64,000 bases of DNA from Paraphysomonas bandaiensis (GCA_965644295.1 CBFFRP010000192.1:3723-67722); one strand, 5' to 3'. Shown: positions 37,339 through 62,048, counted from the stretch's first letter. Program-made: numbers and translations. Notes: generated from the letters alone by a model not told the origin.

Positions 37339-40300
37339 TTACAAATGCTTTACTCCACGTTTCCCTCCAATATTAACACGCGTAGTGCTTGCGTCATCTT
37401 CAATAACCTCGAGACACACATCACAAATTGGTGCACTTCCATCCACACTCTCCGCATTCCTACAGGTCACGTGAATACGTTGTTAATGAACTTAAGTTTA
37501 TAGCACAGTGAATCGTTCATATTGTAGCAGGCATCAATCACCTCCGTGACCTTTGTTTATGGCTCTACCTTTATACTTCCCACTCACTCAATTTAGAATA
37601 GAGCAACCGGCACATGAAGTATTAGTCGACCAGATGTGCTGTTCAATCACAGTTTATAGTTATGACTGACAAGGAGTTGTCAATCATTGAGTTGCACAAA
37701 TATTTCGTAAACACTTCTTAATGCTTAATCATTATATTATTTCTATGATTACAAGATTTCGTGGAGATGTTTTCAACAGTATTTCGCATGTCTAGCCCAT
37801 TCTATCGATCAAACGACGTTGACCACACATTAACATCTCATAACAGATGGTGGCTCAATCGCTCTAACGATTGGGAAATTAAAAACATATGGACACAGGT
37901 CAATCATTTCCTTTAATTCAGCATCGTTTCGTTTCAGATTAGATCCTTTGTTCTTTGGCTGTTTGCGCTTGCAAGAAGTCAGTGATACAAGAGTATTCAT
38001 TATATCATCTGAGTTCACAAAAGGAACACTGAGAACCTCTTCTAGATCACCAATACAACTAAGCAAAGCAAAATGGTGGTCTTCTGGAAGACCATGCCTG
38101 AAAACAATATATTATGGTCAATACATTGCAAATGGGTCTGAGTACCGTAATATAGCAGAGCTGTACTTCTCTATAATATGCCACGCACTACTCGTCGATG
38201 CCACACGACACACAACATCCAGGGAAAACAAATTCCGTAAAAACTCTCTTCCTCTTTCAGCCGCTAAGACAAGCTGGAAAATATATATTTAAACGAGTAA
38301 TAGCATTAACAAGCATCACACCTGTGCACATCGCAGGATCTCTTTATCATTTTTGACTCCAATTAAACTAAGATGTCGTTCCGCCCACCTCTCCATTTCA
38401 CCCGCATTTTGCTTAAGTTGTTCGTAAAAATTGTTGATATTGTAGTTAATAATGCTGGTACACCGACTATTCGTGTGTTGTATGCTTTTATGACACTCAA
38501 ACAAACCAACAAATACTTGCTGTAAAGCTAATGTGACCATACTAGATAGAGGCATATCCATTACATTGCCCACTGCACTAGCTGTAGGAGGGGATGTTAC
38601 CCGTGAAGCAGAAAACTGTAAATGGTTGAAAACAGCGCTTCTGCAACTTAGAGATGGTAACTCGCCAATAAGTGGAACAGTTGCTGCTCGAAACGGCGGT
38701 TCATCCAGAAACCATCGAAGATAGTATCTACACCAACCACTATTATATTAGAAATATTAAGCTTGAATTTGCCTACCTCACAACTGATGTTACAACCCAT
38801 GTAACTCTATGTCGTAAAGCCGTGCGTTTGTGCTGTACGTTATATAAGAGTGCAATGCTGAACTCAGCACCTTCCCTAGGCGGCAAAGAATCCTTAGCAA
38901 CAGAAGAATAACTCATATACTTTAATCCAAACTCGGCACAAATAGTCTTAGCCATCTTTATAACATCAGTCGTAGTAACACGTATCGCTATACCGTCCGT
39001 TATCTGGACATCTTCTTTGCATGCATCCAGAACGCGTGCCGCCAGTAAATGGTCATTGGCAATAGAAGCCATAGATCCCCGCATATATGATATCAAAACC
39101 GCTGAGTTGCTCTTCTCACCTGACTCCATCTGTTGTGCTTCATGACGAACTATATTTTCAATACTTTCAATCAATGCAATAAGTTGATTAGCTAGTAACT
39201 CAAAACGCCTGGACGAACCCGGTCTCCTATCATTCGGCGGAGAAACACACTCCCCGACTAGCCCGACAAATCGCAGTTTCTTACTTTCATTGGAAGGGTC
39301 ATTCTCTATGGTTTTGCATGCATCATGTGTCAGCGCGAGTAGAGAATCTTGAAGATCATCAAATATATACATCGACATAGCCATGTCGCTTTCAGTCATT
39401 GATGACCTTGCAAGCACATCCGAGAGGGCGGCAACAAGTGTTGTGTATCCAATCGAATTCATAATGGAACCATTGCTCAGTACTTCCATAGTATCGTTAG
39501 ATTCAACTTTCTTTGCCGCACGACGGAGATGTAGCATGGTGCGCACACGCCTCACATCACTTGATTTCGCAATGGACATATCAGATAAATTGCATGACTG
39601 CGACAGCACCATCGATACAATGTCTTGATCGATACAAGAGGGTCCAACAGAATTATCTTCATCGCAATATGTAGCCGCTTCAGTTCCCTTTATAGGTGTC
39701 GCAAAATGCGACCTCTCAGCTACTTCGACTGCAGTTTCAGTAGAAGAACAACGCTCTAAACGAAGAATATCAACCTTTGCTCCGTCTTCAGTAGAAAAAG
39801 AAGTCTCTGGCAATGTTGTCGTCGTCACTCTATTAGTTTCTCCTGCTCTCAGACTAACAGTTGCAGATACTGACGCCCTTCTCTGTCTTCTACGAGTTTT
39901 GGGAGCATCCGCAGATAGCACATCCGTACCATTGTTACTGCCTTTCTCAGGTATGTCTGATGTTAAAGGTACTTTTACAATTTGGCCTAAAGTATCTTGG
40001 GCTTTAGATGACTTACGAGGACTCTTTCGCAACGTCATAGGCGTCATTTCATTCACATACTTCACTGTGCTGTCGCCATAGCCTGTAGTAGCTTCAAGGG
40101 TCTCAACATTACTGCCCTCGACCAATTTAAACGGCACTGCCACGGGATCCCAGTGAATGAAACCGGCATCTTTCTCTTCTGAATCAGAATCCGGTTCGAC
40201 ATCAGCACATACAGTATCGCCATCCTTAACTACCCCACCATTACTATCGCTACAGGATATCCCACTTTCTGCTACATCACATGACACAGAAGAACCGTCG

Positions 40301-42049
40301 GCTCCATTTATAGCCATACTTACTTCTGCCACAGAAGGTACCATGGTAGAGTCGTCACGGGATCTGCCTCTACGTGTCGTCCGCCTAACTTTACTTGGAG
40401 ACCCATCTGATTTCTGACTAACAGTTGTAGATACTGACGCCCTTCTCTGTCTTCTACGAGTTTTGGGAGCATCCGCAGATAGCACATCCGTACCATTGTT
40501 ACTCTCTTTCTCGGGTATGTCTGATGCTAAAGGTTCTTTTACAACTTGGCCTAAAGCATCTTGGGCTTTAGATGACTTACAAAGGCTGTCACTACTGCCT
40601 GCAGTAGCTTCAAGGGTCTCAACATTACTGCCCTCGACCAATTTAAATGGCACTGCCATGGGATCCCAGTGAATGAAACCGGCATCTTTCTCTTCTGAAT
40701 CAGAATCCGGTTCGACATCAGCACATACAGTATCGCCATCCTTAACTACCCCACCATTACTACCACTACAGGATATCCCACTTTCTGCTACATCACATGA
40801 CACAGAAGAACCGTCGGCTCCACTTATAGCCATACTTTCTTCTGCCACAGAAGGTACCATGGTAGAGTCGTCACGGGATCTGCCTCTACGTGTCGTCCGC
40901 CTAACTTTACTTGGAGACCCATCTGATTTCTGACTAACAGTTGCAGATACTGATGCCCTTCTCTGTCTTCTACGAGTTTTGGGAGCATCCGCAGATAGCA
41001 CATCCGTACCATTGTTACTCTCTTTCTCGGGTATATCTGATGCTAAAGGTTCTTTTACAACTTGGCCTAAAGCATCTTGGGCTTTAGATGACTTACAAAG
41101 GCTGTCACTACTGCCTGCAGTAGCTTCAAGGGTCTCAACATTACTGCCCTCGACCAATTTAAACGGCACTGCCACGGGATCCCAGTGAATGAAACCGGCA
41201 TCTTTCTCTTCTGAATCAGAATCCGGTTCGACATCAGCACATACAGTATCGCCATCCTTAACTACCCCACCATTACTACCGCTACAGGATATCCCACTTT
41301 CTGCTACATCACATGACACAGAAGAACCGTCGGCTCCATTTATAGCCACACTTTCTTCTGCCACAGAAGGTACCATGGTAGAGTCGTCACGGGATCTGCC
41401 TCTACGTGTCGTCCGCCTAACTTTACTTGGAGACCCATCTGATTTCTGACTAACAGTTGTAGATACTGACGCCCTTCTCTGTCTTCTACGAGTTTTGGGA
41501 GCATCCGCAGATAGCACATCCGTACCATTGTTACTCTCTTTCTCGGGTATGTCTGATGCTAAAGGTTCTTTTACAACTTGGCCTAAAGTATCTTGAACTG
41601 TAGTGAACTTTAAATAGCTTTTATGTGGTGTTGCAGCTGCATTACGCGCATTGTTTTGCACGTTATGATCACTGGTTCCTGCAGGAGACTTTTTCAGTTC
41701 CTCGTGGTCGTAGGCTTGTAAAGGGGTAGAGCCTTGTTTACAGACAGGACCACATTTACTTGAAATCGGATCTATATTCTCATCTTTACTCACTGGACAC
41801 CCCTGAAGCTCTGCCACCAAATACAATGATCGCTTCTTTGAAGAATCATCAGACATATGTGTTTCAATCAGATCTTTGAGCTCTCTCCACATCAAATCAC
41901 TTCTATTGCTCCTCTGGAAGATCACATTCTGTGATAACTTGGGAATATGAAACATATCGGTGTTGTTCGAAGGAGTTCTGGCGGATATATCAGACAATAT
42001 TCGGGTTGAATGTGGCATGCAGTGCTTACAGTGTCTGTGCACAAAACGC
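37339..42049 (-). CDS. Hypothetical multi-exon protein with 172-aa Ser/Asp/Arg-rich tandem repeats
   Basis: 1089-codon open exon 38773..42042 plus downstream exons (38316..38573, 37830..38066 and others). Probable last exon ...APICDVCLEVIEDD...KHL*. The true start is unresolved (AG acceptor near 42050). Confidence 0.65.
39852..41596. repeat. 516-bp coding tandem repeat, about 3.3 copies
   Basis: Near-identical shadow ORFs start at 40157, 40673 and 41189 (period 516). In-frame 172-aa repeats in the minus-strand ORF. Confidence 0.95.
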
Positions 42050-43808: not shown

Positions 43809-45071
43809 ATGTTGAGATCTGAAGATTCTATATACTTCAAAATAAGGCCGGGGGAAAAGGTGTCTGTTGGGGTAGATCGACTGAACGGTATAATCCAGAA
43901 GCTCATAAAATTGGGACAACCGCAGACAGAGGCAAGTAAATTAGCAAAGATAAAAGCAGCGCTGCAGATAGAGGAATTACATGATTTATGGATGTCGGTA
44001 GCGATGATGCCTAAAGCAACAACTACATTTGATTCGGTGAAAGAAGCTTGTGAAGAGTATGACGAGGCTATGACGCAGCTGAAGAAACTAAAGGGAGACA
44101 AGTCTGAAGAGATCAATTTTACAGCGTCGAAGGAGCCAGTGGTTTGTTCATTTTGTCGGAAGAAGGGACATGTAGCAGCGAATTGTTATGCTAAGGAACG
44201 ACAAAGAAAAATGGATAAGTTCAAAAGAAAAGGGAAGACAAAGGAAAAGGCTTCGAAGAGTGTGCAGCAGCCAGGATCAAAGGATTATACTGGTTGTCAT
44301 ATCTGTGGAGATTTTAGTCACAAAGCCCGACAGTGCAAGTCGAGAAAACGGAAGAACATAAAAAACCCGGATAATGAGAATCCTCGAAAATCGAACAGGA
44401 AATTCGAGACAGAATGGAAGAAATACGTCAACGACGGAGAGTCGTCGGATGATGAAGCGAATATGTTTGGAGAAGAGGTTTTGCTATCGGTGGATACGTC
44501 GGAAGAACCTCGTGTATATCTGGACAGTTGTGCAAGTAAAAGACTGTTTATAGTAAAGGATAAAGTTGCACTGGAGTCATTTACTCCTGAGTTTGGGGCA
44601 ATCCAACTAACTAGAAAGGGTTCTCAATTGGAGACACAGGGAACTGGTACATTCGGGGAATGGAGAGACATCAGAGTTAGTGAAGAAGCGGTGAAGAACA
44701 TTGTGTCAGGAGGAATGCTGAGATCAATGGGATACGGATTACAACTGCTCCGAAAGCCTAAAATCGTGGAATTGGACTCTGGAAACGAGGTGTTGACTGG
44801 AGAGTACGATGAGCATGGAGGAATGCCGTATGTGGACTTGATGGAGGTGTTAAATCTGCCAAATGTGTCTATGAGCAATCAGATGGAGGAGGTAAATTTG
44901 TCGGATAATACAGGACAAGATGCGTTGGATCGCTTACATGAGCGTACTGGACATGTCTCGAAATCGAAGTTAAATAGAAGCTCACCGACACATGTTATTC
45001 AGAGGATCAGGACTACAACGACATCACCTTTCGAATGCAAAGGAGAAGAGTTGCAAGAAACCCCTGTGTAA
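43809..45071 (+). CDS. Copia B truncated gag-protease
   Basis: CSFCRKKGHVAANC, CHICGDFSHKARQC, YLDSCASK, LHERTGH. Confidence 0.85.
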   Translation: MLRSEDSIYFKIRPGEKVSVGVDRLNGIIQKLIKLGQPQTEASKLAKIKAALQIEELHDLWMSVAMMPKATTTFDSVKEACEEYDEAMTQLKKLKGDKSEEINFTASKEPVVCSFCRKKGHVAANCYAKERQRKMDKFKRKGKTKEKASKSVQQPGSKDYTGCHICGDFSHKARQCKSRKRKNIKNPDNENPRKSNRKFETEWKKYVNDGESSDDEANMFGEEVLLSVDTSEEPRVYLDSCASKRLFIVKDKVALESFTPEFGAIQLTRKGSQLETQGTGTFGEWRDIRVSEEAVKNIVSGGMLRSMGYGLQLLRKPKIVELDSGNEVLTGEYDEHGGMPYVDLMEVLNLPNVSMSNQMEEVNLSDNTGQDALDRLHERTGHVSKSKLNRSSPTHVIQRIRTTTTSPFECKGEELQETPV

Positions 45072-48000
45072 ATGGTGTGCCAAGGCGAAGATAACCAGGC
45101 ATTCGTCCAAATCACGGGACAACGAAGAGCTAAGCGCAGTCAGGTTTCTGGAAAGAGTGACAGCGGACATCTCAGTCTATCTCAATTGTGAATCCCGACA
45201 AGGGTATAAGTACGTGCTCCTATTTACGGACTTGGCAACGAAGATGATATAGGAATATGGTTTGAGGACTCGAAGCGGAGAGGAGGTGTTCAAATGTCTA
45301 CGACACTTGTGCGAGGTCCACTTAGTGAAGTACGAGGGGTGGAACCGTATAGTGGAGTATCATGCCGATGGAGGATCCGAACTTATTAGTCAGCAGATAA
45401 GAGAGTATCTGTTGCAGCGATATGGGACTCGGGTGTCACATACAACACGAGACACGCCAGAGCTCAACGCGGTGTCTGAGAGGAAATTCCGAACAATTGG
45501 GGAGATGACACTGACGATGTTGACGGCATCTGGACTTCCAAAGTCGTTCTGGTTTGATGCTTATCAAACTGCATGTTACATTGTGCGACGAATGCCAACT
45601 CGGACGTGGCAAGGATGGATGTCTCCATATGAGTGTGTCCCAGGGGGGAGCGTTCCCAGCCTATCGTGGCTACGGAAATGGGGGTGCAAAGCATATGTGC
45701 TAACACCCAAGGCCGACAGGAGGAAGGACTGGGAGGACAAAGCAATGACAGGTTATTTCATAGGGTATCCAGCTGATCGAAAAGGATACAAGGTGCTAGT
45801 GGGGGACACCGTAGTACACTCTGTACATGTATTATTTGATGAATCGGTACCTGAGAGGTCACAGGATTATTATAGAGAGCTGGAGGAGGCTCAAGTGGCT
45901 ATAGATCCCGAGGCTCATCAACCGGGTGAGTTTGAGTATCTTATCGGAAAGCACCATGAGGATGGTGGTCTGCTATACAAGACTAACAGAGTGGTGATAA
46001 GGAAGGGACTTATTGTGGGATACCGGTCGTTGGTTACTGGTAACCAAGTTCAAGTGGAGGATAAAACTCCTATTCATATTGCTGACATCAAGAAGATGAC
46101 AGAGGATCTTGCGCAGAGGGTGGTTAGGGCCAGAGTTACTGACAACCGTGACGGCGGTATCAGCGGAGTGGTGCCACAGCAGTCGGAAAGTGGGCAGGTG
46201 CAGCCCCAGGCTGACTCAGCATTACCTTCGGGGGAAGGGACCCCTGCCGAGAATCATCCGCACGGCAAACGCGCAAGAACTCCAAGGACGGTAACGAATG
46301 TATCGGTGTTAGGACAAATCCATCATTTGAGTGATGAGAGTGATGTGAATGACCTTTTACAGGAGGCAGACTCAGTGTGGATGTCAACGGAAGAGTCGAC
46401 AGTGCCTCAGACACATCGTGAGTCCTTGGAGAGTGCCGAGCACAGGGAGTGGAGACGAGCTCGCCGTGTAGAGCGAGAGGGTTTGGCGAAGCGAGATACC
46501 ATGGAGGTGACTCGTATACCGGACGGAGTCATCCCACTGCACTCCAAGTACGTCTATGGAAAGAAGTACGATAAGGAGGGAGAGGTCCGCCGATATAAGG
46601 CTCGTCTTGTAGCAATCGGTTGTGGACAGCAGTCGAGTGGTTGGGCGAACCATTTCGCACCCATTGTTAAGGGGGTAACAGTGCGACTGTTAATCGCCAT
46701 AGCCTTCGTGATGAACATGGTAATTCATCAACTGGATGTGTCTAACGCATTTCTATATGCAGATATAGAGGGGGACGTATATATGAAGGCAACTCCGGAC
46801 TTTCAGCTGCCTGAGGGGTACTGCTTTAAGTTGAAGAAGTCGTTATACGGGCTTCGGAGTTCCCCGCGGTCGTGGTGGAAAACATTGGATAAATTCATAC
46901 GATCTATGCATTTTAAACCATGTGTATTAGACCCGTGTTTGTATTATCAGTATAAGGGCGATGAATTGATATTATTAACGATATATGTAGATGATATCCT
47001 AGTGTTAGGTCGTGATGTCAACAGAGTGAAGGATATTAAAGCTCAACTGTGTGCCCGGTTTGATATGAAGGATATGGGCGAGATGGAACATTTTCTGAAT
47101 GTTCGAGTCACAAGAACGCCAGAGTATATTCGTCTTGACCAATCAGTCTATGCGGCTAAGATCTTAGAAAAGTTTGAAAAGTATCTTGGGCCACCGCGAA
47201 AGGTACGGAAGAGTCCTCTACCGACGGAAGCAATGGATTTAGTGGCAAAAGGGGCGCGGCATGAGCATACCGAGGAGGAACAGCTTATAGTAGATAACTT
47301 TCCATATCGGCCGCTGATAGGTGCATTACTATATCTATCGATGAACACGAGGCCGGATATTGCCTATGCAGTGGGAGTACTGTCTCGGTTCAGTAATAAG
47401 GTGAATATTGAAGTATGCAAGCTATTAACACACGTATGGCAATATATTCGTGGTTCTATTGACAAAGGGATTCAATATGGGAGTAGACGGTTCGACTTCC
47501 ATATGTTTACTGACGCGGATTGGGCGGGAGACCAGATCTCCAGGAAGTCCACGTCGGGGTACGTTGGGTTTGCAGCGGGAGGGCCTATAGTCTGGCAGTC
47601 CAAACTGCAGACGACAGTGGCAACGTCAAGCATGCAGTCTGAGTATCAATGTATTTACTCGGGTCTCCAAGAAGTGCTATGGGTTCGGGGGGTGACGGGT
47701 GAGATTAAGTTGAGGCTCATCAAACCCACACCATTCTTCATCGACAGTCAGAGTGCCCAGGATTTGGCCGAAAACCCAGTATTTCACAAGAAGTCGAAGC
47801 ACATTGAGATTAAGTATCACATGGTGAGAGAGCACGTGGATCCCAATCAGTTCAATACGATTAAGTTAGTGCATGTGCATACATCGCAACAAGCAGCAGA
47901 TATTTATACAAAGTCATTGGTTGGTTTATCATATATGGAGCAGAGAAAGAGAAATCTTGGAGAGAAAATTAAGAGTTCCACTGAAGTGATTAATGAGGGA

Positions 48001-48450
48001 CCAAGGGATAAAAGAAGACGCAAGTAGGTACTGAGTTTTTTAGACAGAGGTTTAGACTTAGAGATGAGTCTATTTTACTGTCAAGAATTTTTTTATCTCA
48101 GGCATTCAATAGCTGGGAGGCGTCATAGTACAACACTCAATTGAGGGGGAGTGTTGAGATCTGAAGATTCTATATACTTGCAATTGAGTGCAGTATTATG
48201 TGAGATGCAAGGATCGAAAGATATGTATGTAATTAGTACATTATATTGTGTAGTATGAAACTGAAGTAGAAGTGGGTGACTATACAGGATACGATCACTG
48301 AGTGTGTGGTTTGTACACTATAGTAGTAAATGAATGGTGTTGAACACATCGAACACAACTTAGGTTCTTTATCATGTAATGTTTATAATTTTCATCTTAT
48401 CATTTGAGAATAGTAAACCTTAGCAAATAATGTCAACTTCTGTTAAAACA
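43810..48450 (+). mobile_element. Near-complete Copia B LTR retrotransposon (5' deletion, one frameshift, one nonsense codon)
   Basis: 28 nt of 5' LTR; gag with two CCHC knuckles; protease YLDSCAS; HHCC; integrase (TADIS, HADGG, VSERK); RT (IYVDDIL); RNase H (FTDADWAGD); PPT TGAGGGGGAG; LTR from 48152. Frameshift near 44970 and TAG at 45250..45252. Confidence 0.95.
45262..48027 (+). CDS. Copia B integrase, extra ~60-aa domain, RT and RNase H
   Basis: 921-codon ORF in Copia IN-RT-RH order with all catalytic motifs downstream of the first integrase Asp. Confidence 0.93.
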   Translation: MRTRSGEEVFKCLRHLCEVHLVKYEGWNRIVEYHADGGSELISQQIREYLLQRYGTRVSHTTRDTPELNAVSERKFRTIGEMTLTMLTASGLPKSFWFDAYQTACYIVRRMPTRTWQGWMSPYECVPGGSVPSLSWLRKWGCKAYVLTPKADRRKDWEDKAMTGYFIGYPADRKGYKVLVGDTVVHSVHVLFDESVPERSQDYYRELEEAQVAIDPEAHQPGEFEYLIGKHHEDGGLLYKTNRVVIRKGLIVGYRSLVTGNQVQVEDKTPIHIADIKKMTEDLAQRVVRARVTDNRDGGISGVVPQQSESGQVQPQADSALPSGEGTPAENHPHGKRARTPRTVTNVSVLGQIHHLSDESDVNDLLQEADSVWMSTEESTVPQTHRESLESAEHREWRRARRVEREGLAKRDTMEVTRIPDGVIPLHSKYVYGKKYDKEGEVRRYKARLVAIGCGQQSSGWANHFAPIVKGVTVRLLIAIAFVMNMVIHQLDVSNAFLYADIEGDVYMKATPDFQLPEGYCFKLKKSLYGLRSSPRSWWKTLDKFIRSMHFKPCVLDPCLYYQYKGDELILLTIYVDDILVLGRDVNRVKDIKAQLCARFDMKDMGEMEHFLNVRVTRTPEYIRLDQSVYAAKILEKFEKYLGPPRKVRKSPLPTEAMDLVAKGARHEHTEEEQLIVDNFPYRPLIGALLYLSMNTRPDIAYAVGVLSRFSNKVNIEVCKLLTHVWQYIRGSIDKGIQYGSRRFDFHMFTDADWAGDQISRKSTSGYVGFAAGGPIVWQSKLQTTVATSSMQSEYQCIYSGLQEVLWVRGVTGEIKLRLIKPTPFFIDSQSAQDLAENPVFHKKSKHIEIKYHMVREHVDPNQFNTIKLVHVHTSQQAADIYTKSLVGLSYMEQRKRNLGEKIKSSTEVINEGPRDKRRRK

Positions 48451-48536: not shown

Positions 48537-51500
48537 TTAAGTTATGTGTTTAGTTGACTTAATTGGAGGCATAGTTTGCGATAGCTTTGGTTTCGAAATT
48601 GCGCCCCAACCTGGATTAACAGCCAAATGTTTTCGGTACGTCTTTTTCTGTGTTTGTACAAATGTGAAATCATCACGAACAATAATAGAATTCGCTACTG
48701 CATTTGGAATCTTATCCTCGGCACGAACGCGCTGAGTTACATCCCTTTTTCCTAGGGAGGGTGTCACAAGATCCTCCCTGGCACTAGTAGATGCTTTACT
48801 TGACCTCAGTAGTTCATCATTGTCATCAACTACATTCAAAAGTGTATCCATTTCAGAAGCTACAACGGCATTGCGTTGTTTCGCCAATCGTATCCTTTCC
48901 TGGTCAGCATCAGATAGCTTGAACACCTCGCTACTCGATGATTTGCCCCCGAGGTGCTCCTTCAATGACTCCAGCGACATTTTTTCTAATAAATTTGACT
49001 TATACCTTGCAGCACCAATTTTTTGTCGAAAATTCTTGCAAACAGTTGCACTCAATTGGAAACGCGGTAGTTTTCTGTCAGCTGCTTCATCTAGCTTTTC
49101 TATTCGGGCTTCAAGCTGTAGCCGCTTCTGTTCCATCTCGATAAGCGCATCTTTCTGGTCCTTTATATTGTCATGGAACTCCTTCTTCAATTGTCGGAGT
49201 TGGGGGCCAAGTAGCGCTTTTCCGTACCAAGGTTTCAAGCGCTCAGAAGCCTCAGTGGCTGCTAAAGTACCTTCTGCACCAGCGAGGCGTGCATCTAATA
49301 TTTCCAGCTCAACTTGAGCAACATGACATAAATCATACAATTTCGCGACCAGATTAGCATCATCAGGGGCAGCAACTAATGATTTACACAAACTTTCCAA
49401 AAACCATCGCGTAAGACCGGTCAATATATTAATGCTAGTAAACCAATGATATACTGGATCTCTCCGGTGTTTCATTGAACTCCATACCCTCCTTGCAAAC
49501 CCCAAAGCCCGAACTTGTGCAGCTTTTATTTCCACTGATCTCATTCGTACAACATCAAAAAATTGCTCCTCAGAAGGGCTTAGTGTAATATCTGGCTCCG
49601 CACCATCATCATCTAACTCTACAGAGCATTCTGACTGTAGATCACTTAAGTGTCTCTCCAACTCTTCTTTCTTATTAAAAGATACACTTGTTGGCTGTGA
49701 TGACACAATAGGAGGAAATACCGTTGCGCCCGGCTCTTCATCGTTCTCATTTTCTGGTACAGTTTCAGCTCTATTGCGTTTCGTTGAACATGACAGCTCG
49801 CCCACCCAATTGTAACTGAATATATGTTGTAGAGTTACTTTCCTTGTAACAATACTCATACAAGTAGCTCTGACAGATGTTTCAGTTCCACCAAACCCTA
49901 TGATATAGTCCCACGGCATACCAGGATAGAGAGATTCCTTCCAACCTCCAGGCTTATAGCGTCCATCTTTCGCATCCAACTCCGCCATACTAGAAGACAA
50001 ACGGTATTTCTTCGACAGCTGATTAGCCCTGTTTCCTAACCATCGAGACCAACCATTATAAAAAGTCTTGAATCGAATTCCAGTCATAACGTTTCCTTCA
50101 GCTATATACTCAACTTCAACTAGAAAGTCGTTAGGTTTCATAACAAACTCAAGCTGTGTTATACCAGAACCACTGATTTTACCTCGCACAGGAGATTCCA
50201 TTGGAATGCAACAATCAGCCCCCCAAAACAATTGCCAACCAACAATTCCCAATCCATGCTGCACAGCAACCTTAATTTTGATTAGGTTATAGCCTGCTGG
50301 AACGCTGACTTTATCAGGAGTGGATATTTTCGGATCGGAGAATCTTTCACCAGGAATGGTATTCATTTTGGACTTTACTTTCACATCTTTGTACACAAAG
50401 GTGCCTCTTTTTTCAAAGGCACTTAAAAGCAGCTTCTGCTCAGTCATTAATCGTGTCGCAACATCAGCACTTATGACATTAACAAACTTCCTGAAAGTCA
50501 GCGACTTTTTCGCAACTTTTTTCAATAATACTTGGCATTTGGTCTGATGCTTTGTCACTATTACAGACAAGCTGCGTCGTCTTAAGGCAAAAAATCGTTT
50601 GGATATCTGCTCTAAGTCTGCAAGGGCTCTCACATATGCGTAGCAGTGAATCTTTTTACGAACATCATATGAAACTTTGAGCGAAATATTCGTGCGAATA
50701 CACCAAAAGCACTTCTCGAGCACTCGTAATCTGTGAAACACTTTAACTTTCTGGGTTATTAAGTTAAATACCTTCATATCCTATATCACAATTACTCAGT
50801 TGTAAATAGAGTACCACAAAAGTATGATATTACCTGAGTCCATTCTTTCCATCGCAAAAATATAGCTATAGAGTCGTGAGTTGATTCTTTCAATCTGCCA
50901 TTTCGAGGATAAACGGTTGGAATAAACTGGCGCTTGACGAGGAGATTGTTAAATGACGATCGCTTTTCCCATCTACTCTTCAACAAAGATATCAAACCAC
51001 TAGAGCAATCCAAATTCTCCTTTTCAAAAAACTAATGACACCATAAAAAAAGTATAGCAAATTTACACATGAAAACCTTCAACCAGCGATTAAAAACCAT
51101 CCACTTTAATTTCATGCTTCGAAAAAGAGGCACCTTACTGTAGAGCACATTGAGTCTACAAGCAACACGAATATCATAAAAGTAAGAAATGCTTATACAG
51201 ACCATACCGTTTGCAAATACGAATCCAGTTAACCAGTCGCTTTCTATTTAGCATGTGAATGCTTCTTAAAAGCAGCAAAGGCATACGAAGGCGACGGAAA
51301 TACTGTCTCTTTTGTGCTACAATCATTGTGTGTACAACTTCACCATGAATCTATGTACAAGTTGGGATAAGATATAGCTAGCAGCGTAGTAGTGATGACG
51401 TTTACACCTTATACAATACGTCAACCATATTAGATGCCATTCGAACTTTGAATCCAGACACATAGTCCAGCTCTCGCAGAATACTCTTTTCCGTTCTCAA

Positions 51501-54500
51501 TTCCTCCTTTTTGAATATACTGAGCAGTATTTCTTCTCGATTATCCTGAAAACGCCGAAATAAAAGCGCATATGAAAATTTCTGTAAATATATACATTAA
51601 CAGCCGTATGCTTCGCTGACTCCTTCGCCATTTGGCGAACCGTCTTCCTTGTTTGCGACGCTACTTCTCTTCCATACTTCATCATTTGTTGCATCAAGTC
51701 CAGTTCTTGATCTCTTTCATGTCTATCCCATGCCAGCATATCCACGGGCTCCATTACATGCTGGCTAGCATCATATGTGCTGATATCACTAGCTGTACGC
51801 TTGATGCTGCGCTTATCTGACACAGTTTCGTCGCTTTGGGCATGTGAAATTACTGTAGATGACCCCTTTCCAGAAAATGGAACAAAATCCGCAGTCGGAG
51901 TGCAAGTTGGACTTTGTGAAATTGACGAAGAGTCGTAGCTATATGAGTGAGAAAGCTTTGCGTCAATCCTTAAATCGTTTGGACACTTCAAGTCAGGTGA
52001 AGTGTTGGGCGATTTTGGTTTCATGATTCTCTTGAAAGCCAATGAGAGTCGTCTCTGACGCGCACGTGGGCCAGCATCCACCAAAAACTCATCGTTACCA
52101 TCATCAAAAGGAACGCTTCCATAACATCCGGTTTGTTGTTCTTTCTCGCGTAGCATCGATTCTCTTTCCTTGAAAGCTTTTGCAGCATCACGCCGTTTCT
52201 TTAGCTTTTCCATTCGTGTCGTACGTGCAATAAAAGCCAGCTCCTCTAATAAAAATCGTTATCAGATTATAAAATACAATATTTCAATTTACCGGCACGA
52301 GAATGTTCAATTTGGATGGTATCTCGACCACCGCCATCTTCCAAACTGTCATCCATACCACTACGATAGCAATTATCGGATCGTCCGTACAAGTTTTATG
52401 CTTACCGAGTAGCCCAACGCAGAAAGGCGTACAAAACTTTCCGCAAGAGGTTGTTGCGATATTGATATTTTGTGTTCCTGGAATTCTTATTCACTCTAGC
52501 ATGCACTCTCAAATTTTTGAAAACTCTATGCGCTACCCTGTAGATTCATACTTTAAACAAGTCATATAGAAACACAACCAATGATACCTGTGATATCTAA
52601 ATGCTGAATCAAACAGTGTCCACACTTCAACTTCGTAAAATCTATCTCTCAATTCATCAATGAGTGCTAATGAGCACTTCGTTAAAAGCAATATTATATA
52701 TACCTCGAGACTTACATTTCGTCGATCGTTTTATGGTATGGAACTTCAGGCCGTAGTCCGCAGCATCGTATTCTTTGATTCCAACCCCAGGAAACATTTC
52801 GTAATAACGATTATGTATTGAATGAAAGATTGATGAACAGTGAAGAGTTTCATCTGCTGACCTGAAGTGATGCAAGTTATATATCGACTGACGAAAAAGG
52901 GACTTACAGTCCAATGTCAAATCGGTCTAAATCATCTTTCCATCTAAATGGTGTGCCCAGTTGGCGACTAAATGCCTGCAGCTCCACAGTAGACAACGAC
53001 CTGTCTGTGGGTTCAACATCACTTGTGGTTTGAACACGTCGAAGGGCCTTTAATTTCGCTTTCGCAAGCTGCCGCGACCTATATACCGTCATATAATAAA
53101 ATTCACAACAGAATATTTTGCGCACTTTTTGGAGTCTAATGAATCAGATGTTGAGGCTGATCCTTCAGCGAGAGTTACTTCTTCAATGAGTTTTTTCTTA
53201 TCTTCATCACTCAGCTTTATCTTAACCGGAGGAAGGTGTATCGCAATATTAGGAAATAAAAATTGTCGGAATTGCCTCGTATTTCGCTTTACAAAATCCC
53301 GTGTTCGGACCTAAATTTGATATAGGTAATTTACCTAGTGGATTAGTAAGTTCAACGTCCAACCTTAAATACCGTCGCAGCTCGCCAAATCTGAAACGGC
53401 AACCGTATACTGTCCTCAATTTTCAAACATCTCTACACGAACAGATTATTTTGATATGACAATACCGTAAAGTACCATAATGTAGCCTTTCTCAACCCAA
53501 CTTCTTCGCAAGCCCTTTCGACGACGTGTCCAGTAAAGCCACCAATGAATAAACACCTTCCTTTGCTTGTCTAAATGCTTCGCATAAAATCTATCAGCCG
53601 GTTTATTAAAGTTTGCTTCAAAAATGTAGTATCTATACGCACGACATTAAATCATTCAAAACACGAGGTATTGGCGAAAGAACCTCTTCCAGCCTCTGAA
53701 AGTTGACAATAGCGCATACGTAGGCATCACTCGAGTAACTAAAAACTTCGTTTTCTCTTTGGCCCGTCCAGTTTCGGTTGCGTGCCGCCTGTGAACATAT
53801 CAACTGTACAGCGATTACAACAGGTTACACTGACCTCCACACAAAAAACGGCCAGTAACAGACTCTAAAGTGGTGTTTCCTACGTAAATTCTGTTTTGTG
53901 TAATATCTCCAAGCTTTCACCTTCCGAAAGCAATAGTGTCGGAGAGTTCGAATTTGCTTGGTGTCAGTAGCCCACGCAACAAAAACTCTTGCTTTCATGA
54001 AGTTATACAAATGCTTCCAGGCCCTCCTCGCAACTCTGTAACGCCATCTTCTCGTAAAACCTCGATAATTAGTCTGAAGCCTCGTCGCGGCATACGCCTG
54101 CACCAACTCAACAACATCATTATTACTGGTTCCGTACAGCCCTTTTCCATGCATAATTGCTCGTCGGAAAATGGTAAAAAGACTAGGTGGGCCCGCTAAA
54201 TCCACTCTACTGGATCCCGGGGGAAACACTTTCTTCGATATTCCTGCTTTTAACAGTGCAGCTTTCTTCGTCACAGACTTAACACCCTCAGATGAGTCAT
54301 GCAGGCCCATCACCGAGGCTCCTGAGGTTGTATTGGGAAACATATCAGCGCCTAACAAGTCAACTACAAATGGATCAACGGCCACAGTTTTCTCATAATA
54401 CTCCTCCAACAAAATGTCATGAGCATAATCAATTATCGCACGCAGATGACTCAAACGAGTCTGAGAAAGTGGCCCACGTGGGTACTGAATTCCCAAAACG

Positions 54501-55777
54501 CTATTCTCGAAGTCATTAATTGCCTTTCGTTTGCGGGCTTCAGCTTTTGCAAGATTTTCCTTCTTTTTTCTCTTCTCTTCAAACATATTATTGACTCGTT
54601 CGGTCCGAAATTTCTCTAGTTGCTCCATTTCTTTTTTCCGTTCCTCAGGATCGGCAGAAAATACACTTTCACGCAATATATCTATACGAATCTTAGGCTC
54701 TGGAGTAGTAGTGAGCTCTTCTATTTCCGTAGAACATTGCTTTTGAACATCGACGTTGCTAGACGCCATCATTACAAGTTTCCTGGCCGCGATTTTACAG
54801 GACCTATCCACATCAGCTTGACTAAACTTCATCAGTTCATAAAGAGCACTTAGTTCTTTATGTTTTAATTGAACTTGTGCTGAGCAAAGTAGCAGCGTCA
54901 TAGAACTTAGGGCCATCGTTTTCAATTTCATTGGATTGCCTATGCCGTCCGCACCTTTCACAATTACAATCTCATGTGTATTGGATGCTTGGAATTTGTT
55001 TTCGACAAGATCCCAGTTGCTAGTTATCTTCCTGCTTGTATGTCCCAGAACAAATCTATTCAGATTTTTCAGTTTACTTTTCGCTTTGCTACCTCCAATT
55101 TTCCGCGCCTTTGGTTTTGATTCCTCGATAACTTCGTCTGGCTTCGGTGGATTAGGAACTTTTTCTTCTGCAGCAGGTTCCGCTTCAGGTGGAGGGATAC
55201 TCTCCTCAAGCGAAGCGGGTTCGTTTATTTCTATTGATGGTGCTCTAGATACAACAGGTGTTGCTCTATTACTGAGAATAGCTTCTTGCTCGACTTCAGG
55301 TGAACCTCGAAGGGATTGCACAAGCTGTTGTGCCTCCTCTTGAATATACTTCTCTTCAAGAGAATACATGTCCTCATTTTCAGCAGACGACCATAGCGAG
55401 CTCTCAGGTGGATCTATAATGATGCGTTTACCCTTTCTTGGAATAATTCGGCGTTTTATTCTGGAGGTGGCATGAGATGATTTCATCGGCGGAAATATAT
55501 GAGATAAATTAGGTTCAGACAGTACGCTGGTAGCCGCATAGGACGCATTATCCGACACATAGCCCGATTGTGGAATGGGTACAGGTACAACCTGTGGCTT
55601 TCGAACAGCGACACTGATTGCAGCTGAAGGCTCAGCGCTTCTTCTATACTGGCTTTTATCTAGTAACTTGCCCTTCATACAATCGGTATAAGGAAAACAA
55701 TATAGTATGAAGTCCCATACCTGGTAGGGGGAAGTAATACTGCTATTAAGGGAGAGATCATCGTTGTAGTCAGCCAT
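48537..55777 (-). CDS. Large multi-exon protein with IQ motif, Sfi1-like Trp/Arg repeats, jacalin-like beta-prism domain and coiled coil
   Basis: Starts MADYNDD at 55777. IQ-like AATRLQTNYRGFTRRWRY; repeated F..W motifs (VFVAWA, KVKAWR, IFLRWK). Last exon has ERFSD..IVGWQLFW..SPVRG..DFLVEVE..TGIRFKT..IIGFGG (jacalin-like). Short introns between the ORFs. Confidence 0.65.
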
Positions 55778-58053: not shown

Positions 58054-58425
58054 TGACTTTAAGGCTGGAGAAGTTTACTGGAGAATTCCGGGTTTGATAT
58101 CCACGCTGATAGGGAAAAATTTAATTTTGGCCCTTTTTGGCCCTCGGCCCGCTAGGGCCCTCGGCCCGCATTTGGCCCTCTACTACAACTAACAATAATA
58201 ACAATAATTCTTAATTAAAAACACACACAACACACACTACAACCACAAGCAACAATAACGCACAAAGCAAAGGGCAGTATTACGCACAAAGCAAAGGGTC
58301 AAATTTAGCAAGAGTTATTAATATCTTAAGCAAGAGCAACTTTATACCAAAACATTTTTCGGAGCTGGGGGCTCCCCACGCTTCGACTCTACGAGCCGGC
58401 GTCCACTGCCCCCAGGCCCCCGCCC

Positions 58426-59828
58426 CTAAACAACGCCGGGGCCGGCCCCACCGGCCCTATTCCGGCGTTTGGCGCCGGTCTGAGCCCTGCCGGCGGCAAC
58501 ACAGCATGTCTCAATCTCCTCGGTGAAAGCACAGTCTTCGGCTGTCACTGTAGACTCCTTGCCACATCCAGTGTATTTCACTATCTCCTCAATTGAAATA
58601 CAATCATCAGTGGGTACATCGACAACATATCCATTCTGCAGTCGGCACTGCTCGCGATAGCCAACGATGGACCCCTCGTAAAATCCAACTCTCACCACCT
58701 CGTACATGCACCCATCCTCAGGATCATAGTGGCTCTTCCCAATCAAAAACTTGTATTGGTTGAGCTGCGCAAACTTAGTCCTTTGGACTGACCTGTCCAT
58801 TTCAAATGCAGCGTAGTCCTCTGGCAATGTGAATTGCTGGAATGGCAGATGTTTCGGCCGGGATGCATGACCCCTGAGAATTTTGTTTCGAAGTTCGACG
58901 TATTCTTGACTTAGCTTCCGAATAGTACTCACATATAACACCACGGAAGGATGCGCAGTGGGAAAAGCCTCGTTCAGCTTTCTGTTAAACCTTTCCAGTG
59001 GATTGTTGGTTCTATTAATCAAGCGGGATGTTGATGACTCGTCTGTTACAATGCCATGCACATTCCAATCATTAGGATCGTACGAGAGCATCCAGGTCTT
59101 CACGAAGTATTTCCAGAATATGTCAAACTTGGCTCGGTGAACACCTTCGTCAAAATGTTGGCGCACATATGGTATCCCTTTAGGCTCAATATCTTCAATA
59201 GGAATTGTTAATAGAATGTTGATGAGACCAGTTTTATTCATCAATGGCGTAATCACCTCATCGGGAATACCCAGGCTGAACAATTTCCTACGGATTGCTT
59301 GCTTCCAGTGAAACGCGCATCCAGTTACAGGCTTGCCCTCAAAGTTCCGTTTGATAGCATTCATCAGACCCTTCTCGAAATCCACTGAGCCATTGATGAT
59401 CTCCATCATGAAATCTGTTGAGGCCTTACTCAAATAAAGAGCCATGGAATACACTTCTTCAAACTTCGATTGCAGCAATATATAAAATACAGGAATGTAT
59501 AGGGACGAGGCGTAGTCATATATCATAATTACTAGACACTGAGAAAATCCCTTTGGCACACATTTAAAAGTACAGTCTATAAACAGATGGACCGGACCAC
59601 CCTTACAATATTGATTAAATCAGGATGTGCAAAGCCAATTATCTTCTGCATCTGATTGCTAACATTGATTGAAGTATTGAACTGTAAAAATAGTCTCTCG
59701 TCGTCATCAGCACAGTTCACAAGCGGATACGACGATATAATTCCTTCCCAATCATTGAACTCTAAACGTCTACACTGATACACCAAAGCTTTGAGTTTCG
59801 ACGTTTCGAGATATCTATATGGCATTCC
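58426..59828 (-). pseudogene. MULE transposase 3' exon, left arm (one frameshift near 59604; 5' exons missing)
   Basis: LFIDCTFKCVP, SVDFEKGL, GCAFHWKQAI and RTNNPLERFN give the MULE D-D-CxxH-E signature. Confidence 0.88.
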
Positions 59829-59965
59829 TACCGAAATAAGCAAAAGAAAATGAAGTGAAAACAGCAAAAAGAAAAAAAATATCAATTTTCTCACCGAGCT
59901 GCTTATATTGATATTTTTTTTCTTTTTGCTGTTTTCACTTCATTTTCTTTTGCTTATTTCGGTAG

Positions 59966-61358
59966 GAATGCCATATAGATATCTCGAAACGTCGAAACTC
60001 AAAGCTTTGGTGTATCAGTGTAGACGTTTAGAGTTCAATGATTGGGAAGGAATTATATCGTCGTATCCGCTTGTGAACTGTGCTGATGACGACGAGAGAC
60101 TATTTTTACAGTTCAATACTTCAATCAATGTTAGCAATCAGATGCAGAAGATAATTGGCTTTGCACATCCTGATTTAATCAATATTGTAAAGGGTGGTCC
60201 GGTCCATCTGTTTATAGACTGTACTTTTAAATGTGTGCCAAAGAGTTTTCTCAGTGTCTAGTAATTATGATATATGACTACACCTCGTCCCTATACATTG
60301 CTGTATTTTATATATTGCTGCAATCGAAGTTTGAAGAAGTGTATTCCATGGCTCTTTATTTGAGTAAGGCATCAACAGATTTCATGATGGAGATCATCAA
60401 TGGCTCAGTGGATTTCGAGAAGGGCTCTGATGAATGCTATCAAACGGAACTTTGAGGGCAAGCCTGTAACTGGATGCGCGTTTCTACTGAAGCAAGCAAT
60501 CCGTAGGAAATTGTTCAGCCTGGGTATTCCGATGAGGTGATTACGCCATTGATAATAAAACTGGTCTCATCAACATTCTATTAACAATTCCTATTGAAGA
60601 TATTGAGCCTAAAGGGCTACCATATGTGCGCCAACATTTTGACGAAGGTGTTCACCGAGCCAAGTTTGACATATTCTGGAAATACTTCGTGAAGACCTGG
60701 ATGCTCTCGTACGATCCTAATGATTGGAATGTGCATGGCATTGTAACAGACGAGTCATCAACATCCCGCTTGATTAATAGAACCAACAATCCACTGGAAA
60801 GGTTTAACAGAAAGCTGAACGAGGCTTTTCCCACTGCGCATCCTTCCGTGGTGTTATATGTGAGTACTATTTTCGGAAGCTAAGTCAAGAATACGTCGAA
60901 CTTCGAAACAAAGATTCTCAGGGGTCATGCATCCGGCCGAGCCATTCCAGCAATTCACATTGCCAGAGGACTACGCTGCATTTGAAATGGACAGGTCAGT
61001 CCAAGGACTAAGTTTGCGCGGCTCAACCAATACAAGTTTTTGATTGGGAAGAGCCACTATGATCCTGAGGATGGGTGCATGTACGAGGTGGTGAGAGTTG
61101 GACTCAGCGAGGGGTCCATCGTTAGCTATCGCGAGCAGTGCCGACTGCAGAATGGATATGTTGTCGATGTACCCACTGATGATTGTATTTCAATTGAGGA
61201 GATAGTGAAATACTACTGGATGTGGCAAGGAGTCTACAGTGACAGCCGAAGACTGTGCTTTCACCGAGGAGATTGAGCATGTGTGTTGCCGCCGGCAGGG
61301 CTAGACCGGCGCCAAACGCCGGAATAGAGCCAGTGGAGCCGGCCCCGGCGTTGTTTAG
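59966..61358 (+). pseudogene. MULE transposase 3' exon, right arm (several small indels)
   Basis: Reverse complement of the left arm, fragmented into ORFs at 59908, 60231, 60626 and 61040. Confidence 0.88.
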
Positions 61359-62048
61359 GGGCGGGGGCCTGGGAGCAGTGGACGCCGGCTCGTAGAGTCG
61401 AAGCGTGGGGAGCCCCCAGCTCCGAAAAATGTTTTGGTATAAAGTTGCTCTTGCTTAAGATATTAATAACTCTTGCTAAATTTGACCCTTTGCTTTGTGC
61501 GTAATACTGCCCTTTGCTTTGTGCGTTATTGTTGCTTGTGGTTGTAGTGTGTGTTGTGTGTGTTTTTAATTAAGAATTATTGTTATTATTGTTAGTTGTA
61601 GTAGAGGGCCAAATGCGGGCCGAGGGCCCTAGCGGGCCGAGGGCCAAAAAGGGCCAAAATTAAATTTTTCCGCTGATAGATGTGTATTGCCAGATTATCC
61701 AGTAATACAGTTATACATTACGTATTTCCTTCAGTGCTTATTGGGGATTGATTGTACTGAGGAGTACGAATACCAGGCTTCAACTACAATGAGAATACTG
61801 AATGTATCTTCCCTTATACAGTTGTGATGAGTTATTATGATCAACTGTGTTAGACTGATGTGTTTGGTATTGAATATGAATTTTGTTCATTCCATTGATC
61901 ACGGAATCGTAGGTAGACATATTTATATTATTGATAATAAGATGCAATTTCCTTACTCTTGAAATTGCTGGTAGATAGCATTGTAGTGGTAGACATATAT
62001 TTGTTCATTGTGATTTGATTATATTGTTATTATTATGGAAGAGGAAAC

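What the first reader, a model, noticed from the sequence alone, without database searches (positions are those of the whole stretch)
45925..46101. Unnamed ~60-aa domain shared by a Copia integrase and an unrelated Mutator transposase: candidate common targeting module
Seen: between integrase and RT, Copia B encodes GEFEYLIGKHHED--GGLLYKTNRVVIRKGLIVGYRSLVTGNQVQVEDKTPIHIADIKKMT. The MULE transposase ends (58570..58761 minus; mirrored at ~61025..61213) with NQYKFLIGKSHYDPEDGCMYEVVRVGFYEGSIVGYREQCRLQNGYVVDVPTDDCISIEEIVKYT. By eye there are 16 identities in the first ~34 aligned positions, plus a terminal I.I..I.K.T motif. In both proteins it lies C-terminal to the DDE catalytic core, and the DNA is not obviously similar, so this is not a recent paste. 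Known: C-terminal integrase appendages such as the chromovirus chromodomain and the Ty5 targeting domain direct insertion, and I know no such domain in standard Copia or MULE proteins. Inference: a small beta-rich (SH3/Tudor/chromo-like) reader exchanged between class I and class II elements that steers both into the same chromatin, which could explain the TE islands between genes here.
Basis: partly seen in the sequence, partly recalled or inferred. Interest (0 to 1): 0.9.

Follow-up and report, generated by a model that had tools for sequence, protein, structure and literature searches.

The report
Barrel domain shared by Copia and MULE
Two unrelated kinds of jumping gene in a marine protist, a Copia retrotransposon and a MULE cut-and-paste transposon, carry the same small, undescribed folded domain just after their DNA-inserting enzyme; it probably tethers the enzyme to chromatin or a host factor, but that role is untested.

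Summary
The DNA is not alike.

- **Not a one-off scrap.** The domain sits about 20 residues after the integrase SH3-like domain in hundreds of Copia copies of many diverged families in this genome. It also occurs in 281 protein clusters from public marine data.
- **MULE side.** It is in every copy of the MULE family here and in the 22 closest MULE relatives elsewhere (41-53% identical cores).
- **One old exchange.** On a domain tree the MULE and Copia versions fall on opposite sides of a single branch. The direction is unresolved.
- **Fold.** No Pfam family or solved structure matches by sequence. Two independent AlphaFold models (pLDDT 92 and 95) give the same helix, four-to-five-strand barrel, helix. 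This resembles SH3-like barrels (Tudor, chromo-barrel, KOW, CAP-Gly) only weakly (Z at most 6.9).
- **Function.** A targeting or tethering role is plausible but unproven. A conserved aromatic cage is not evident.
- **Prior work.** A "putative chromodomain" on diatom CoDi-A Copia integrases (2009) may be the same module; I could not check.
- **Earlier scan reports.** The scan reported this domain before on other DNA of this genome (s1-442371, s1-440755).

The parts
45907..46110 (+). The shared ~65-aa domain in Copia B (core 45925-46101), in the integrase C-terminal tail
   Evidence: significant match to MULE. AF2 model pLDDT 91.9, H6-12, E16-19, E22-32, E35-44, E47-51, H58-67; 281 related clusters.
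45646..45852 (+). Integrase SH3-like C-terminal domain (PF25597) just upstream of the new domain
   Evidence: E 1.5e-17, residues 129-197 of the ORF. hhalign against the new domain gives probability 1.5%, so no detectable duplication.
45262..48027 (+). Copia B pol ORF remnant (integrase C-part, new domain, disordered linker, RT, RNase H). This copy is broken upstream; intact copies have a 1534-aa frame.
46498..47178 (+). Copia reverse transcriptase (RVT_2)
   Evidence: E 1.8e-57, residues 413-639.
58564..58770 (-). The shared domain at the C-terminal end of the MULE transposase (core 58570-58761)
   Evidence: AF2 model from MULE-lineage rows only, pLDDT 95.2, same order of elements.
58426..59559 (-). 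5'-truncated MULE transposase ORF (377 aa). Intact copies elsewhere have a 612-aa frame with a WRKY/FLYWCH-like finger, the MULE core and the domain.
61016..61213 (+). Mirrored, slightly decayed second copy of the MULE domain
   Evidence: 94% identity; inverted arms.
58113..61671 (.). Palindromic rearranged MULE copy made of two 3' halves
   Evidence: inverted repeats I1-I10, 95-100% complementary.

Best explanation
This is a previously unnamed, independently folding domain of about 65 residues: a short helix, a four-to-five-stranded small beta-barrel of SH3-like topology, and a C-terminal helix. It is an accessory module on two unrelated DDE-type DNA-inserting enzymes. One is the integrase of a large Ty1/Copia clade, where it sits about 20 residues after the SH3-like C-terminal domain and before a disordered linker and RT. 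The other is one clade of MULE transposases, where it sits right after the catalytic core. One lineage acquired it from the other, or both from a third source, once and long ago. It has since been kept under purifying selection in both.

The most likely role (inferred, not shown) is tethering. The acidic barrel would bind a basic host chromatin component, a histone tail or a chromatin protein. That would bring the integrase or transposase complex to permitted target chromatin, as chromodomains do for chromoviruses and as the Ty1 and Ty5 integrase tails do in yeast.
For: Shown:
- Significant similarity between the two peptides.
- At least 574 candidate places in this 62.6-Mb genome, in Copia frames of 1475-1688 aa at 31-99% identity.
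- 281 public clusters at E<=1e-3. Eighteen of the 20 long ones have the order rve / SH3_retrovirus / domain / RVT_2.
- Every MULE-core place in the genome also has the domain, including six 100%-identical full-length copies.
- The 22 closest foreign MULE relatives carry it. More distant ones stop at the core or have other tails.
- On the domain tree, the 9 MULE rows fall on one side of a branch from all 46 Copia rows, support 82.
- Two confident, independently built models have the same architecture and the same top structural neighbours.

Inferred for tethering:
- The position equals that of known integrase targeting modules (established knowledge: chromovirus chromodomain, Ty1 and Ty5 integrase tails).
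- A related MULE (P0245) carries the histone reader zf-CW at its C-terminus, downstream of the transposase core (PF07496, E 4.6e-13).
- The domain is acidic (median pI 5.5, mean net charge -2.6), which suits a basic ligand rather than DNA.
- Structural neighbours include Tudor, chromo-barrel, Agenet, PWWP and BAH readers.
Against: - No binding partner is known.
- No Chromo, Tudor, Agenet, PWWP or MBT HMM matches any of 92 members.
- Structural matches are weak (best Z 5.6 and 6.9; Foldseek E at least 0.18). They mix readers with KOW, CAP-Gly, VapX and Sm folds, which is the level the tool calls a common arrangement.
- The polar residues conserved in both lineages are H, D and R, not an aromatic cage. 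The aromatic before the invariant R is H, D or N in MULEs.
- There is no evidence here that Copia and MULE copies share insertion neighbourhoods.
Confidence: 0.45

Rival explanations
1. It is the already reported 'putative chromodomain' of diatom CoDi-A (CoDi-I) Ty1/Copia integrases. It would then be a very divergent chromodomain that is known on the Copia side, with only the MULE side new.
For: PMC2774666 and PMC5348765 report a chromodomain-like C-terminal module on CoDi-A/CoDi-I integrases of a stramenopile, in the same position. Chromo-barrel structures (MRG15, RBBP1, Tip60, MRG2) are among the neighbours at Z 4.2-5.1.
Against: The Pfam Chromo HMM matches none of 92 members even at E<=1. 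In this genome it hits other places only, including a Gypsy with RVT_1 in the same frame. The published alignment is held only as an image, so identity could not be checked. The model has more strands than a canonical chromodomain plus an N-terminal helix.
Confidence: 0.3
2. It is a nucleic-acid-handling accessory of the insertion machinery rather than a chromatin tether. It would be a second SH3/KOW-like barrel that binds the element's DNA ends, target DNA or RNA, like the C-terminal domain of retroviral integrase.
For: KOW domains of Spt5/NusG, EF-P/eIF5A and Sm folds are among the best structural neighbours. An invariant Arg and a mostly basic residue at the position after the conserved T/V pair are shared by both lineages. 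Both hosts are DNA-inserting enzymes.
Against: The domain is acidic overall, with a conserved D-x-ED loop. There is no profile similarity to the integrase's own SH3-like domain. MULE relatives work without it.
Confidence: 0.15
3. It mediates self-association or regulation, such as multimerisation of the enzyme, nuclear import or escape from silencing. It would have no influence on target choice.
For: Small barrels often dimerise (VapX and Sm neighbours). Basic NLS-like runs lie next to the domain in both proteins and in the third-context proteins (read from the sequences). Tandem copies occur (P0169).
Against: Nothing specific. No test was run.
Confidence: 0.08
4. The similarity is chance, or the MULE merely trapped a scrap of Copia coding sequence in this one family.
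For: Only one MULE family in this genome has it, and its copies are nearly identical.
Against: Shuffle p is about 2e-9. Twenty-two foreign MULE relatives with 41-53% identical cores carry a full, diverged copy at the same place. It folds confidently from MULE-only rows.
Confidence: 0.02

Closest known systems
Chromodomain of chromoviral (Ty3/Gypsy) integrases, and the 'putative chromodomain' of diatom CoDi-A/CoDi-I Ty1/Copia integrases (PMC2774666, PMC5348765)
   Same: A small beta-rich module fused to the C-terminus of an LTR-retrotransposon integrase. For CoDi-A it is even the same superfamily and the same position, in a stramenopile.
   Different: No match to the Pfam Chromo HMM. More strands and an extra N-terminal helix. 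Also present on a DNA transposase. Identity with the CoDi-A module could not be tested.
Tudor-domain Gypsy of Ectocarpus (Gypsy-10_Ec32) and the Chronos chromodomain Gypsy of oomycetes (PMC12477816, PMC5348765)
   Same: Independent captures of Royal-family-type barrels by stramenopile retrotransposon integrases. The fold class is similar (Tudor neighbours at Z 4.3-4.9).
   Different: Those domains are recognisable by sequence as Tudor or Chromo, and this one is not. Those are Gypsy elements only; this one spans Copia and MULE.
MULE transposases with C-terminal zinc modules (SWIM in MuDR-type elements and the P. tricornutum MULE, bioRxiv 10.1101/2023.01.02.522487; PHD-bearing Rehavkus elements, from my own knowledge; zf-CW in relative P0245)
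   Same: An accessory module appended after the MULE catalytic core. zf-CW and PHD are histone readers.
   Different: Here the appendage is a metal-free barrel with no SWIM, and it is shared with a retrotransposon.
Ty1 and Ty5 integrase C-terminal targeting motifs of yeast (established knowledge)
   Same: Located in the integrase tail after the SH3-like domain of a Ty1/Copia element. They tether to a host protein.
   Different: Those are short linear motifs, not a folded domain, and there is no sequence relation.

Membership tests
Chromodomain (Pfam PF00385) | Sequence match to the Chromo profile | tested here: not met
   No hit for either window peptide at E<=10 or for any of 92 members at E<=1. 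In the own genome, Chromo hits lie at other places.
Chromodomain (Pfam PF00385) | Three-stranded sheet packed against one C-terminal helix; canonical HP1/Polycomb-type structures as close neighbours | tested here: inconclusive
   The models have an N-terminal helix, 4-5 strands and a C-terminal helix. Only chromo-barrel entries appear, at Z 4.2-5.1.
Chromodomain / Tudor (Royal superfamily) | Conserved aromatic cage for methyl-lysine or methyl-arginine | tested here: inconclusive
   Aromatics conserved in both lineages are those of the N-terminal [YF]x[YFW]L motif and the Tyr of the second strand. The aromatic before the invariant Arg is H, D or N in MULEs. Three-dimensional positions could not be inspected.
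Tudor / Agenet / PWWP / MBT | Sequence match to any of these profiles | tested here: not met
   The only such hit is Tudor_RapA, in 1 of 92 members at E 0.096. There is no PDB sequence hit with profiles A1 or A2.
Tudor / Agenet / PWWP / MBT | SH3-like five-stranded barrel | tested here: inconclusive
   53BP1, SMN, ERCC6L2, RDM15, UHRF1, AGDP and SAWADEE appear at Z 4.3-4.9, or Foldseek E 0.4-1.6. They are tied with KOW, CAP-Gly, Sm and VapX.
CAP-Gly | CAP-Gly profile match and clear structural superiority over other folds | tested here: not met
   The best structural row for the MULE model is Bik1 CAP-Gly at Z 6.9, below the Z 8 level the tool advises. No Pfam CAP_GLY hit.
CoDi-A 'putative chromodomain' of diatom Copia (Llorens 2009) | Module at the C-terminus of a Ty1/Copia integrase of a stramenopile | tested here: met
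The domain lies about 20 residues after PF25597 in 18 of 20 long hits.
CoDi-A 'putative chromodomain' of diatom Copia (Llorens 2009) | Sequence equivalence with the published CoDi-A module | not testable with these tools
   The alignment in Additional file 2 is an image and no sequence text is held.
Ty1/Copia polyprotein (host protein 1) | rve integrase core, SH3_retrovirus and RVT_2, in the order IN before RT | tested here: met
   (RVT_2 E 6e-58, SH3_retrovirus E 2e-17, rve E 2e-7).
MULE transposase (host protein 2) | PF10551 MULE domain and homology to MULE transposases; N-terminal WRKY/FLYWCH-type finger | tested here: met
   The protein's own PF10551 score is under the cut-off (18.9 bits). 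Sixty-four homologues were found, many with PF10551 over the cut-off and some with FLYWCH or WRKY. The finger matches are weak (E 0.05-0.15).

The most novel reading that the evidence does not exclude
An unnamed family of small barrel domains acts as a portable tether to chromatin or a host factor. It has moved between Ty1/Copia integrases, a MULE transposase clade and at least one further protein type (basic/acidic proteins with one or two copies, some with a Cys-rich tail or an AT-hook-like motif) in marine protists. It would decide where both classes of element insert.
Probability: 0.35. Interest if true: 0.7.

Novelty: new variant of a known kind. Interest (0 to 1): 0.55.

Why it matters
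Fusions of integrases with chromatin readers are the best-understood way in which mobile elements choose safe landing sites. So far they are known almost only from retrotransposons and Mavericks.

A single folded module kept for a long time on both a retrotransposon integrase and a cut-and-paste transposase would show that such modules are traded across the class I / class II divide. It would also give a compact, testable handle on target choice in poorly studied marine protists: 65 residues and confident models.

If it is the CoDi-A 'chromodomain', the finding corrects its classification and extends it to DNA transposons.

Tried and rejected
- **Pfam on the peptides and on 92 members:** nothing.
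- **PDB by sequence with two profiles:** nothing.
- **ESM Atlas by features and by shape:** nothing usable.
- **Foldseek against PDB and BFVD:** no match at E<=0.001.
- **Word-indexed protein search on the domain regions:** 2 hits for Copia and none for MULE.
- **Duplication of the integrase's own SH3-like domain:** rejected, hhalign probability 1.5%.
- **Equivalence with Pfam Chromo hits in this genome:** rejected. Those lie in 349-352-aa frames and in a Gypsy frame with RVT_1.
- **Fetching diverged own-genome copies:** Diverged copies came from public protein sets instead.
- **Reading the CoDi-A alignment from supplements:** images only.
could not be verified. None of the 20 long public hits scanned with Pfam carries RVT_1, and RVT_1 places in the genome do not coincide with the listed domain places.
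- **LTRs of the window's Copia copy:** not found, apart from a 37-nt repeat.

Full report
**Observation**

The MULE peptide recurs in mirror image at 61016-61213.

BLASTP of the whole Copia ORF (45262-48027, 921 aa) against the whole MULE ORF (58426-59559 minus, 377 aa) finds one significant alignment. It covers precisely these segments: 26/66 identical, E 1e-6. A Smith-Waterman score of 86 compares with 22.7 +/- 4.3 for 20,000 shuffles, with a maximum of 54 and a Gumbel p of about 2e-9. The underlying DNA shows no alignment beyond 29 nt, so this is not a recent paste.

**Where it sits**

In the Copia ORF, Pfam finds SH3_retrovirus at residues 129-197 and RVT_2 at 413-639. The domain occupies about 215-282, and a low-complexity linker follows. 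An intact copy of the same family adds the rve core upstream.

The window's MULE copy is a palindrome of two 3' halves. Intact copies elsewhere have a 612-aa open frame. It carries weak WRKY/FLYWCH-type finger matches at the N-terminus, a MULE-domain match at 227-321, and the domain at about 497-566. About 45 further residues follow, and there is no SWIM finger.

**How widespread in this genome**

The genome has 62.6 Mb in 669 contigs. The Copia peptide finds the domain in at least 150 scored places of 512 candidates, at 99, 71, 59, 56 and 53% identity, in open frames of up to 1596 aa. The MULE peptide additionally reaches families at 31-34% identity in frames of 1651-1688 aa. A 92-row profile finds 574 candidates, including further families with frames of 1475-1587 aa. 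The domain is therefore standard equipment of the main Copia clade here.

The MULE family has about 30 places, essentially 100% identical:
- six are full length;
- twelve share one in-frame internal deletion;
- six are 5'-truncated.

Every place that has the MULE core also has the domain.

**Outside this genome**

A three-row profile searched against 1.84 billion representative proteins finds 281 proteins at E<=1e-3 and 60 at E<=1e-10. Most are short fragments from marine metagenomes and transcriptomes; cluster members carry TARA and MMETSP labels. Of 20 long hits, 18 show the Copia order, with the domain about 20 residues after SH3_retrovirus and before RVT_2. The other two look like decayed Copia pieces.

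The 612-aa MULE protein has 64 relatives. The 22 closest, with cores 41-53% identical, all carry a full, diverged copy of the domain right after the core. More distant relatives end within a few residues of the core. Others have different tails, and one of these (P0245) ends in a zf-CW finger at E 4.6e-13.

**History**

A maximum-likelihood tree of 113 domain sequences used 67 columns, so many forks are unresolved. It puts eight of nine MULE-linked domains in one group (SH-aLRT 87) with the ninth beside it. All 46 Copia-linked domains are on the other side, and the split has support 82. This fits one old exchange followed by vertical descent in each lineage. Without a root the direction is open. 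The far greater diversity on the Copia side hints at transfer from Copia to MULE, but a third source is possible.

**A third context**

Several hits are neither Copia nor MULE:
- Proteins with a basic NLS-like start, an acidic and serine-rich run, the domain, and in some a Cys-rich tail (P0140, P0143, P0173, P0167, P0128, P0095). These group near the MULE clade.
- A protein with two tandem copies (P0169).
- A protein with an RGRPRG motif that looks like an AT-hook by eye (P0178).

Two AT-rich contigs carry a second domain-bearing ORF just downstream (L066, L067). None has a Pfam family, and their nature is unresolved.

**What the domain is**

No Pfam family matches either peptide at E<=10, or any of 92 members at E<=1. 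No solved structure matches by sequence.

AlphaFold2 on the 92-row alignment gives pLDDT 91.9: helix 6-12, strands 16-19, 22-32, 35-44 and 47-51, helix 58-67. A second model, built only from MULE-lineage and neighbouring rows, gives pLDDT 95.2 with the same order of elements.

Structure searches give no strong match:
- **Foldseek:** best E 0.58 and 0.18.
- **VIA-align:** best Z 5.6 and 6.9.
- **BFVD and the ESM Atlas:** nothing informative.

The neighbours are all small SH3-like barrels. They include VapX, CAP-Gly, KOW, Sm and EF-P. They also include the readers 53BP1, SMN, ERCC6L2, RDM15, UHRF1, Agenet, SAWADEE, PWWP and BAH, and the chromo-barrels of MRG15, RBBP1, Tip60 and MRG2. Both models share the same neighbours, so they have one fold. 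At these scores the tool warns that only a common arrangement may be shared.

It is not a detectable duplicate of the integrase's own SH3-like domain (hhalign probability 1.5%).

The Pfam Chromo profile hits other places in the genome. These are frames of 349-352 aa and, weakly, a 1614-aa frame that also holds RVT_1, which is a chromovirus-like Gypsy.

**Residues**

The following are shared by both lineages:
- an N-terminal [YF]x[YFW]L motif;
- an invariant or near-invariant His;
- an acidic [ED]-D loop;
- a Tyr on the second strand;
- a T/V-T/V-R/K-V/I stretch;
- I-V-[AG]-x-R with an invariant Arg;
- a closing I-[HS]-[IV]-x-[DE]-[IV]..[MY]-T.

The aromatic before the invariant Arg is Tyr in Copia but His, Asp or Asn in MULEs. 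A classic aromatic cage is therefore not evident. The domain is acidic, with median pI 5.5 and mean net charge about -2.6.

**Mechanism**

Shown: a conserved, autonomously folding module is kept on two unrelated DNA-inserting enzymes, in active copies.

Inferred: it tethers the enzyme to a basic chromatin component or host protein. Four things support this:
- its position matches that of known integrase targeting modules;
- a related MULE has zf-CW at its C-terminus, downstream of the core;
- it is acidic;
- its fold class includes many histone readers.

I put this at about 0.45. Nucleic-acid handling is at about 0.15 and self-association or regulation at about 0.08.

It has no support here:
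- The 3' flanks of 26 MULE copies are unique sequence, with GC of about 0.36 over 500 nt. They are not Copia.
- By eye, I compared MULE places with the listed Copia places on the same contigs. Nearest distances run from 13 to 140 kb, and many contigs have none. That is roughly what about 574 copies in 62.6 Mb would give at random.

This is a crude look, not a test.

**Comparison with what is known**

- Chromodomains on chromoviral integrases direct integration (cited in PMC5348765).
- Diatom CoDi-A/CoDi-I Copia integrases were reported in 2009 to end in a 'putative chromodomain' (PMC2774666; repeated in PMC5348765).
- Oomycete Chronos elements have chromodomains on Gypsy integrases.
- Ectocarpus Gypsy elements have chromodomains, and in one case a Tudor domain (PMC12477816).
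- The described P. tricornutum MULE has a SWIM finger.

The kind, an integrase plus a small reader-like barrel, is therefore known. It may already be known for this very Copia clade, but I could not compare sequences because the published alignment is an image. What I found in none of the papers searched is the same module on a MULE transposase clade, or a module of this sequence family under any name.

**Earlier notes of this scan**

Notes on other DNA of this genome describe the same Copia/MULE domain (s1-442371). My results agree with that note independently. Another note reports a similar domain shared by a Gypsy and Copia elements in what it calls a chrysophyte (s1-440755). I could not verify the Gypsy claim or the taxon.

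**Verdict**

The domain is real, old, selectively kept and unnamed in Pfam. Exchange between classes is supported. The chromatin-reader and common-targeting functions remain hypotheses. I rate it a new variant of a known kind, of moderate interest.

Noticed in passing
G000 loci L031-L060 (e.g. L036:1-2158; L034): The MULE family is essentially 100% identical across about 30 copies. Six are full length. Twelve share the same in-frame internal deletion (reference positions 953-1190, giving a 533-aa frame). Six start at reference position 1054. A deletion derivative has therefore itself amplified, which suggests very recent activity.
   Followed up: partly
P0245 (public relative of the MULE transposase): A related MULE transposase ends in a zf-CW finger (PF07496, E 4.6e-13) instead of the barrel domain. 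Other relatives have 90-190-residue tails with no family.
   Followed up: partly
L066:667-1578 and about 1700-2100; L067:341-1087 and 1440-1595; P0169; P0178 (L061:1535-2416): The domain also occurs outside Copia and MULE. One type has a basic NLS-like start, an acidic and serine-rich run and the domain, sometimes with a Cys-rich tail. Two AT-rich contigs have a second domain-bearing ORF just downstream. One protein has two tandem copies, and one has an RGRPRG motif. Whether these are host genes or another element is unknown.
   Followed up: partly
G000:C150:172978-175449 and C218:169484-171955: A 1614-aa frame holds RVT_1 and, 2.3 kb downstream, a weak Pfam Chromo match (20.6 bits). This looks like a chromovirus-like Gypsy family, separate from the domain studied here.
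   Followed up: no
G000:C288:644039-644197, C297:1061367-1061525, C510:14256-14414 and five more: At least eight places have a strong Chromo match (47-53 bits) in near-identical open frames of 349-352 aa. A multi-copy chromodomain ORF may itself belong to a repeat.
   Followed up: no
window 43809-48188: The window's Copia B copy is broken between gag-protease (43809-45071) and pol (45262-48027), whereas intact copies have one 1534-aa frame. No LTR pair was found, only a 37-nt direct repeat starting TG at 43810 and 48152.
   Followed up: partly
window 58113-61671: The MULE copy in the window is a near-perfect palindrome of two 3' halves, with ten inverted-repeat blocks at 95-100%. Other notes of the scan describe the same thing.
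   Followed up: partly
window 34588-36306 (+), 38773-42042 (-), 48537-50777 (-), 53825-55816 (-): There is a further Copia RT fragment (RVT_2, E 3e-55) with no copy of the domain nearby. Three long ORFs (1089, 746 and 663 aa) have no Pfam family.
   Followed up: no
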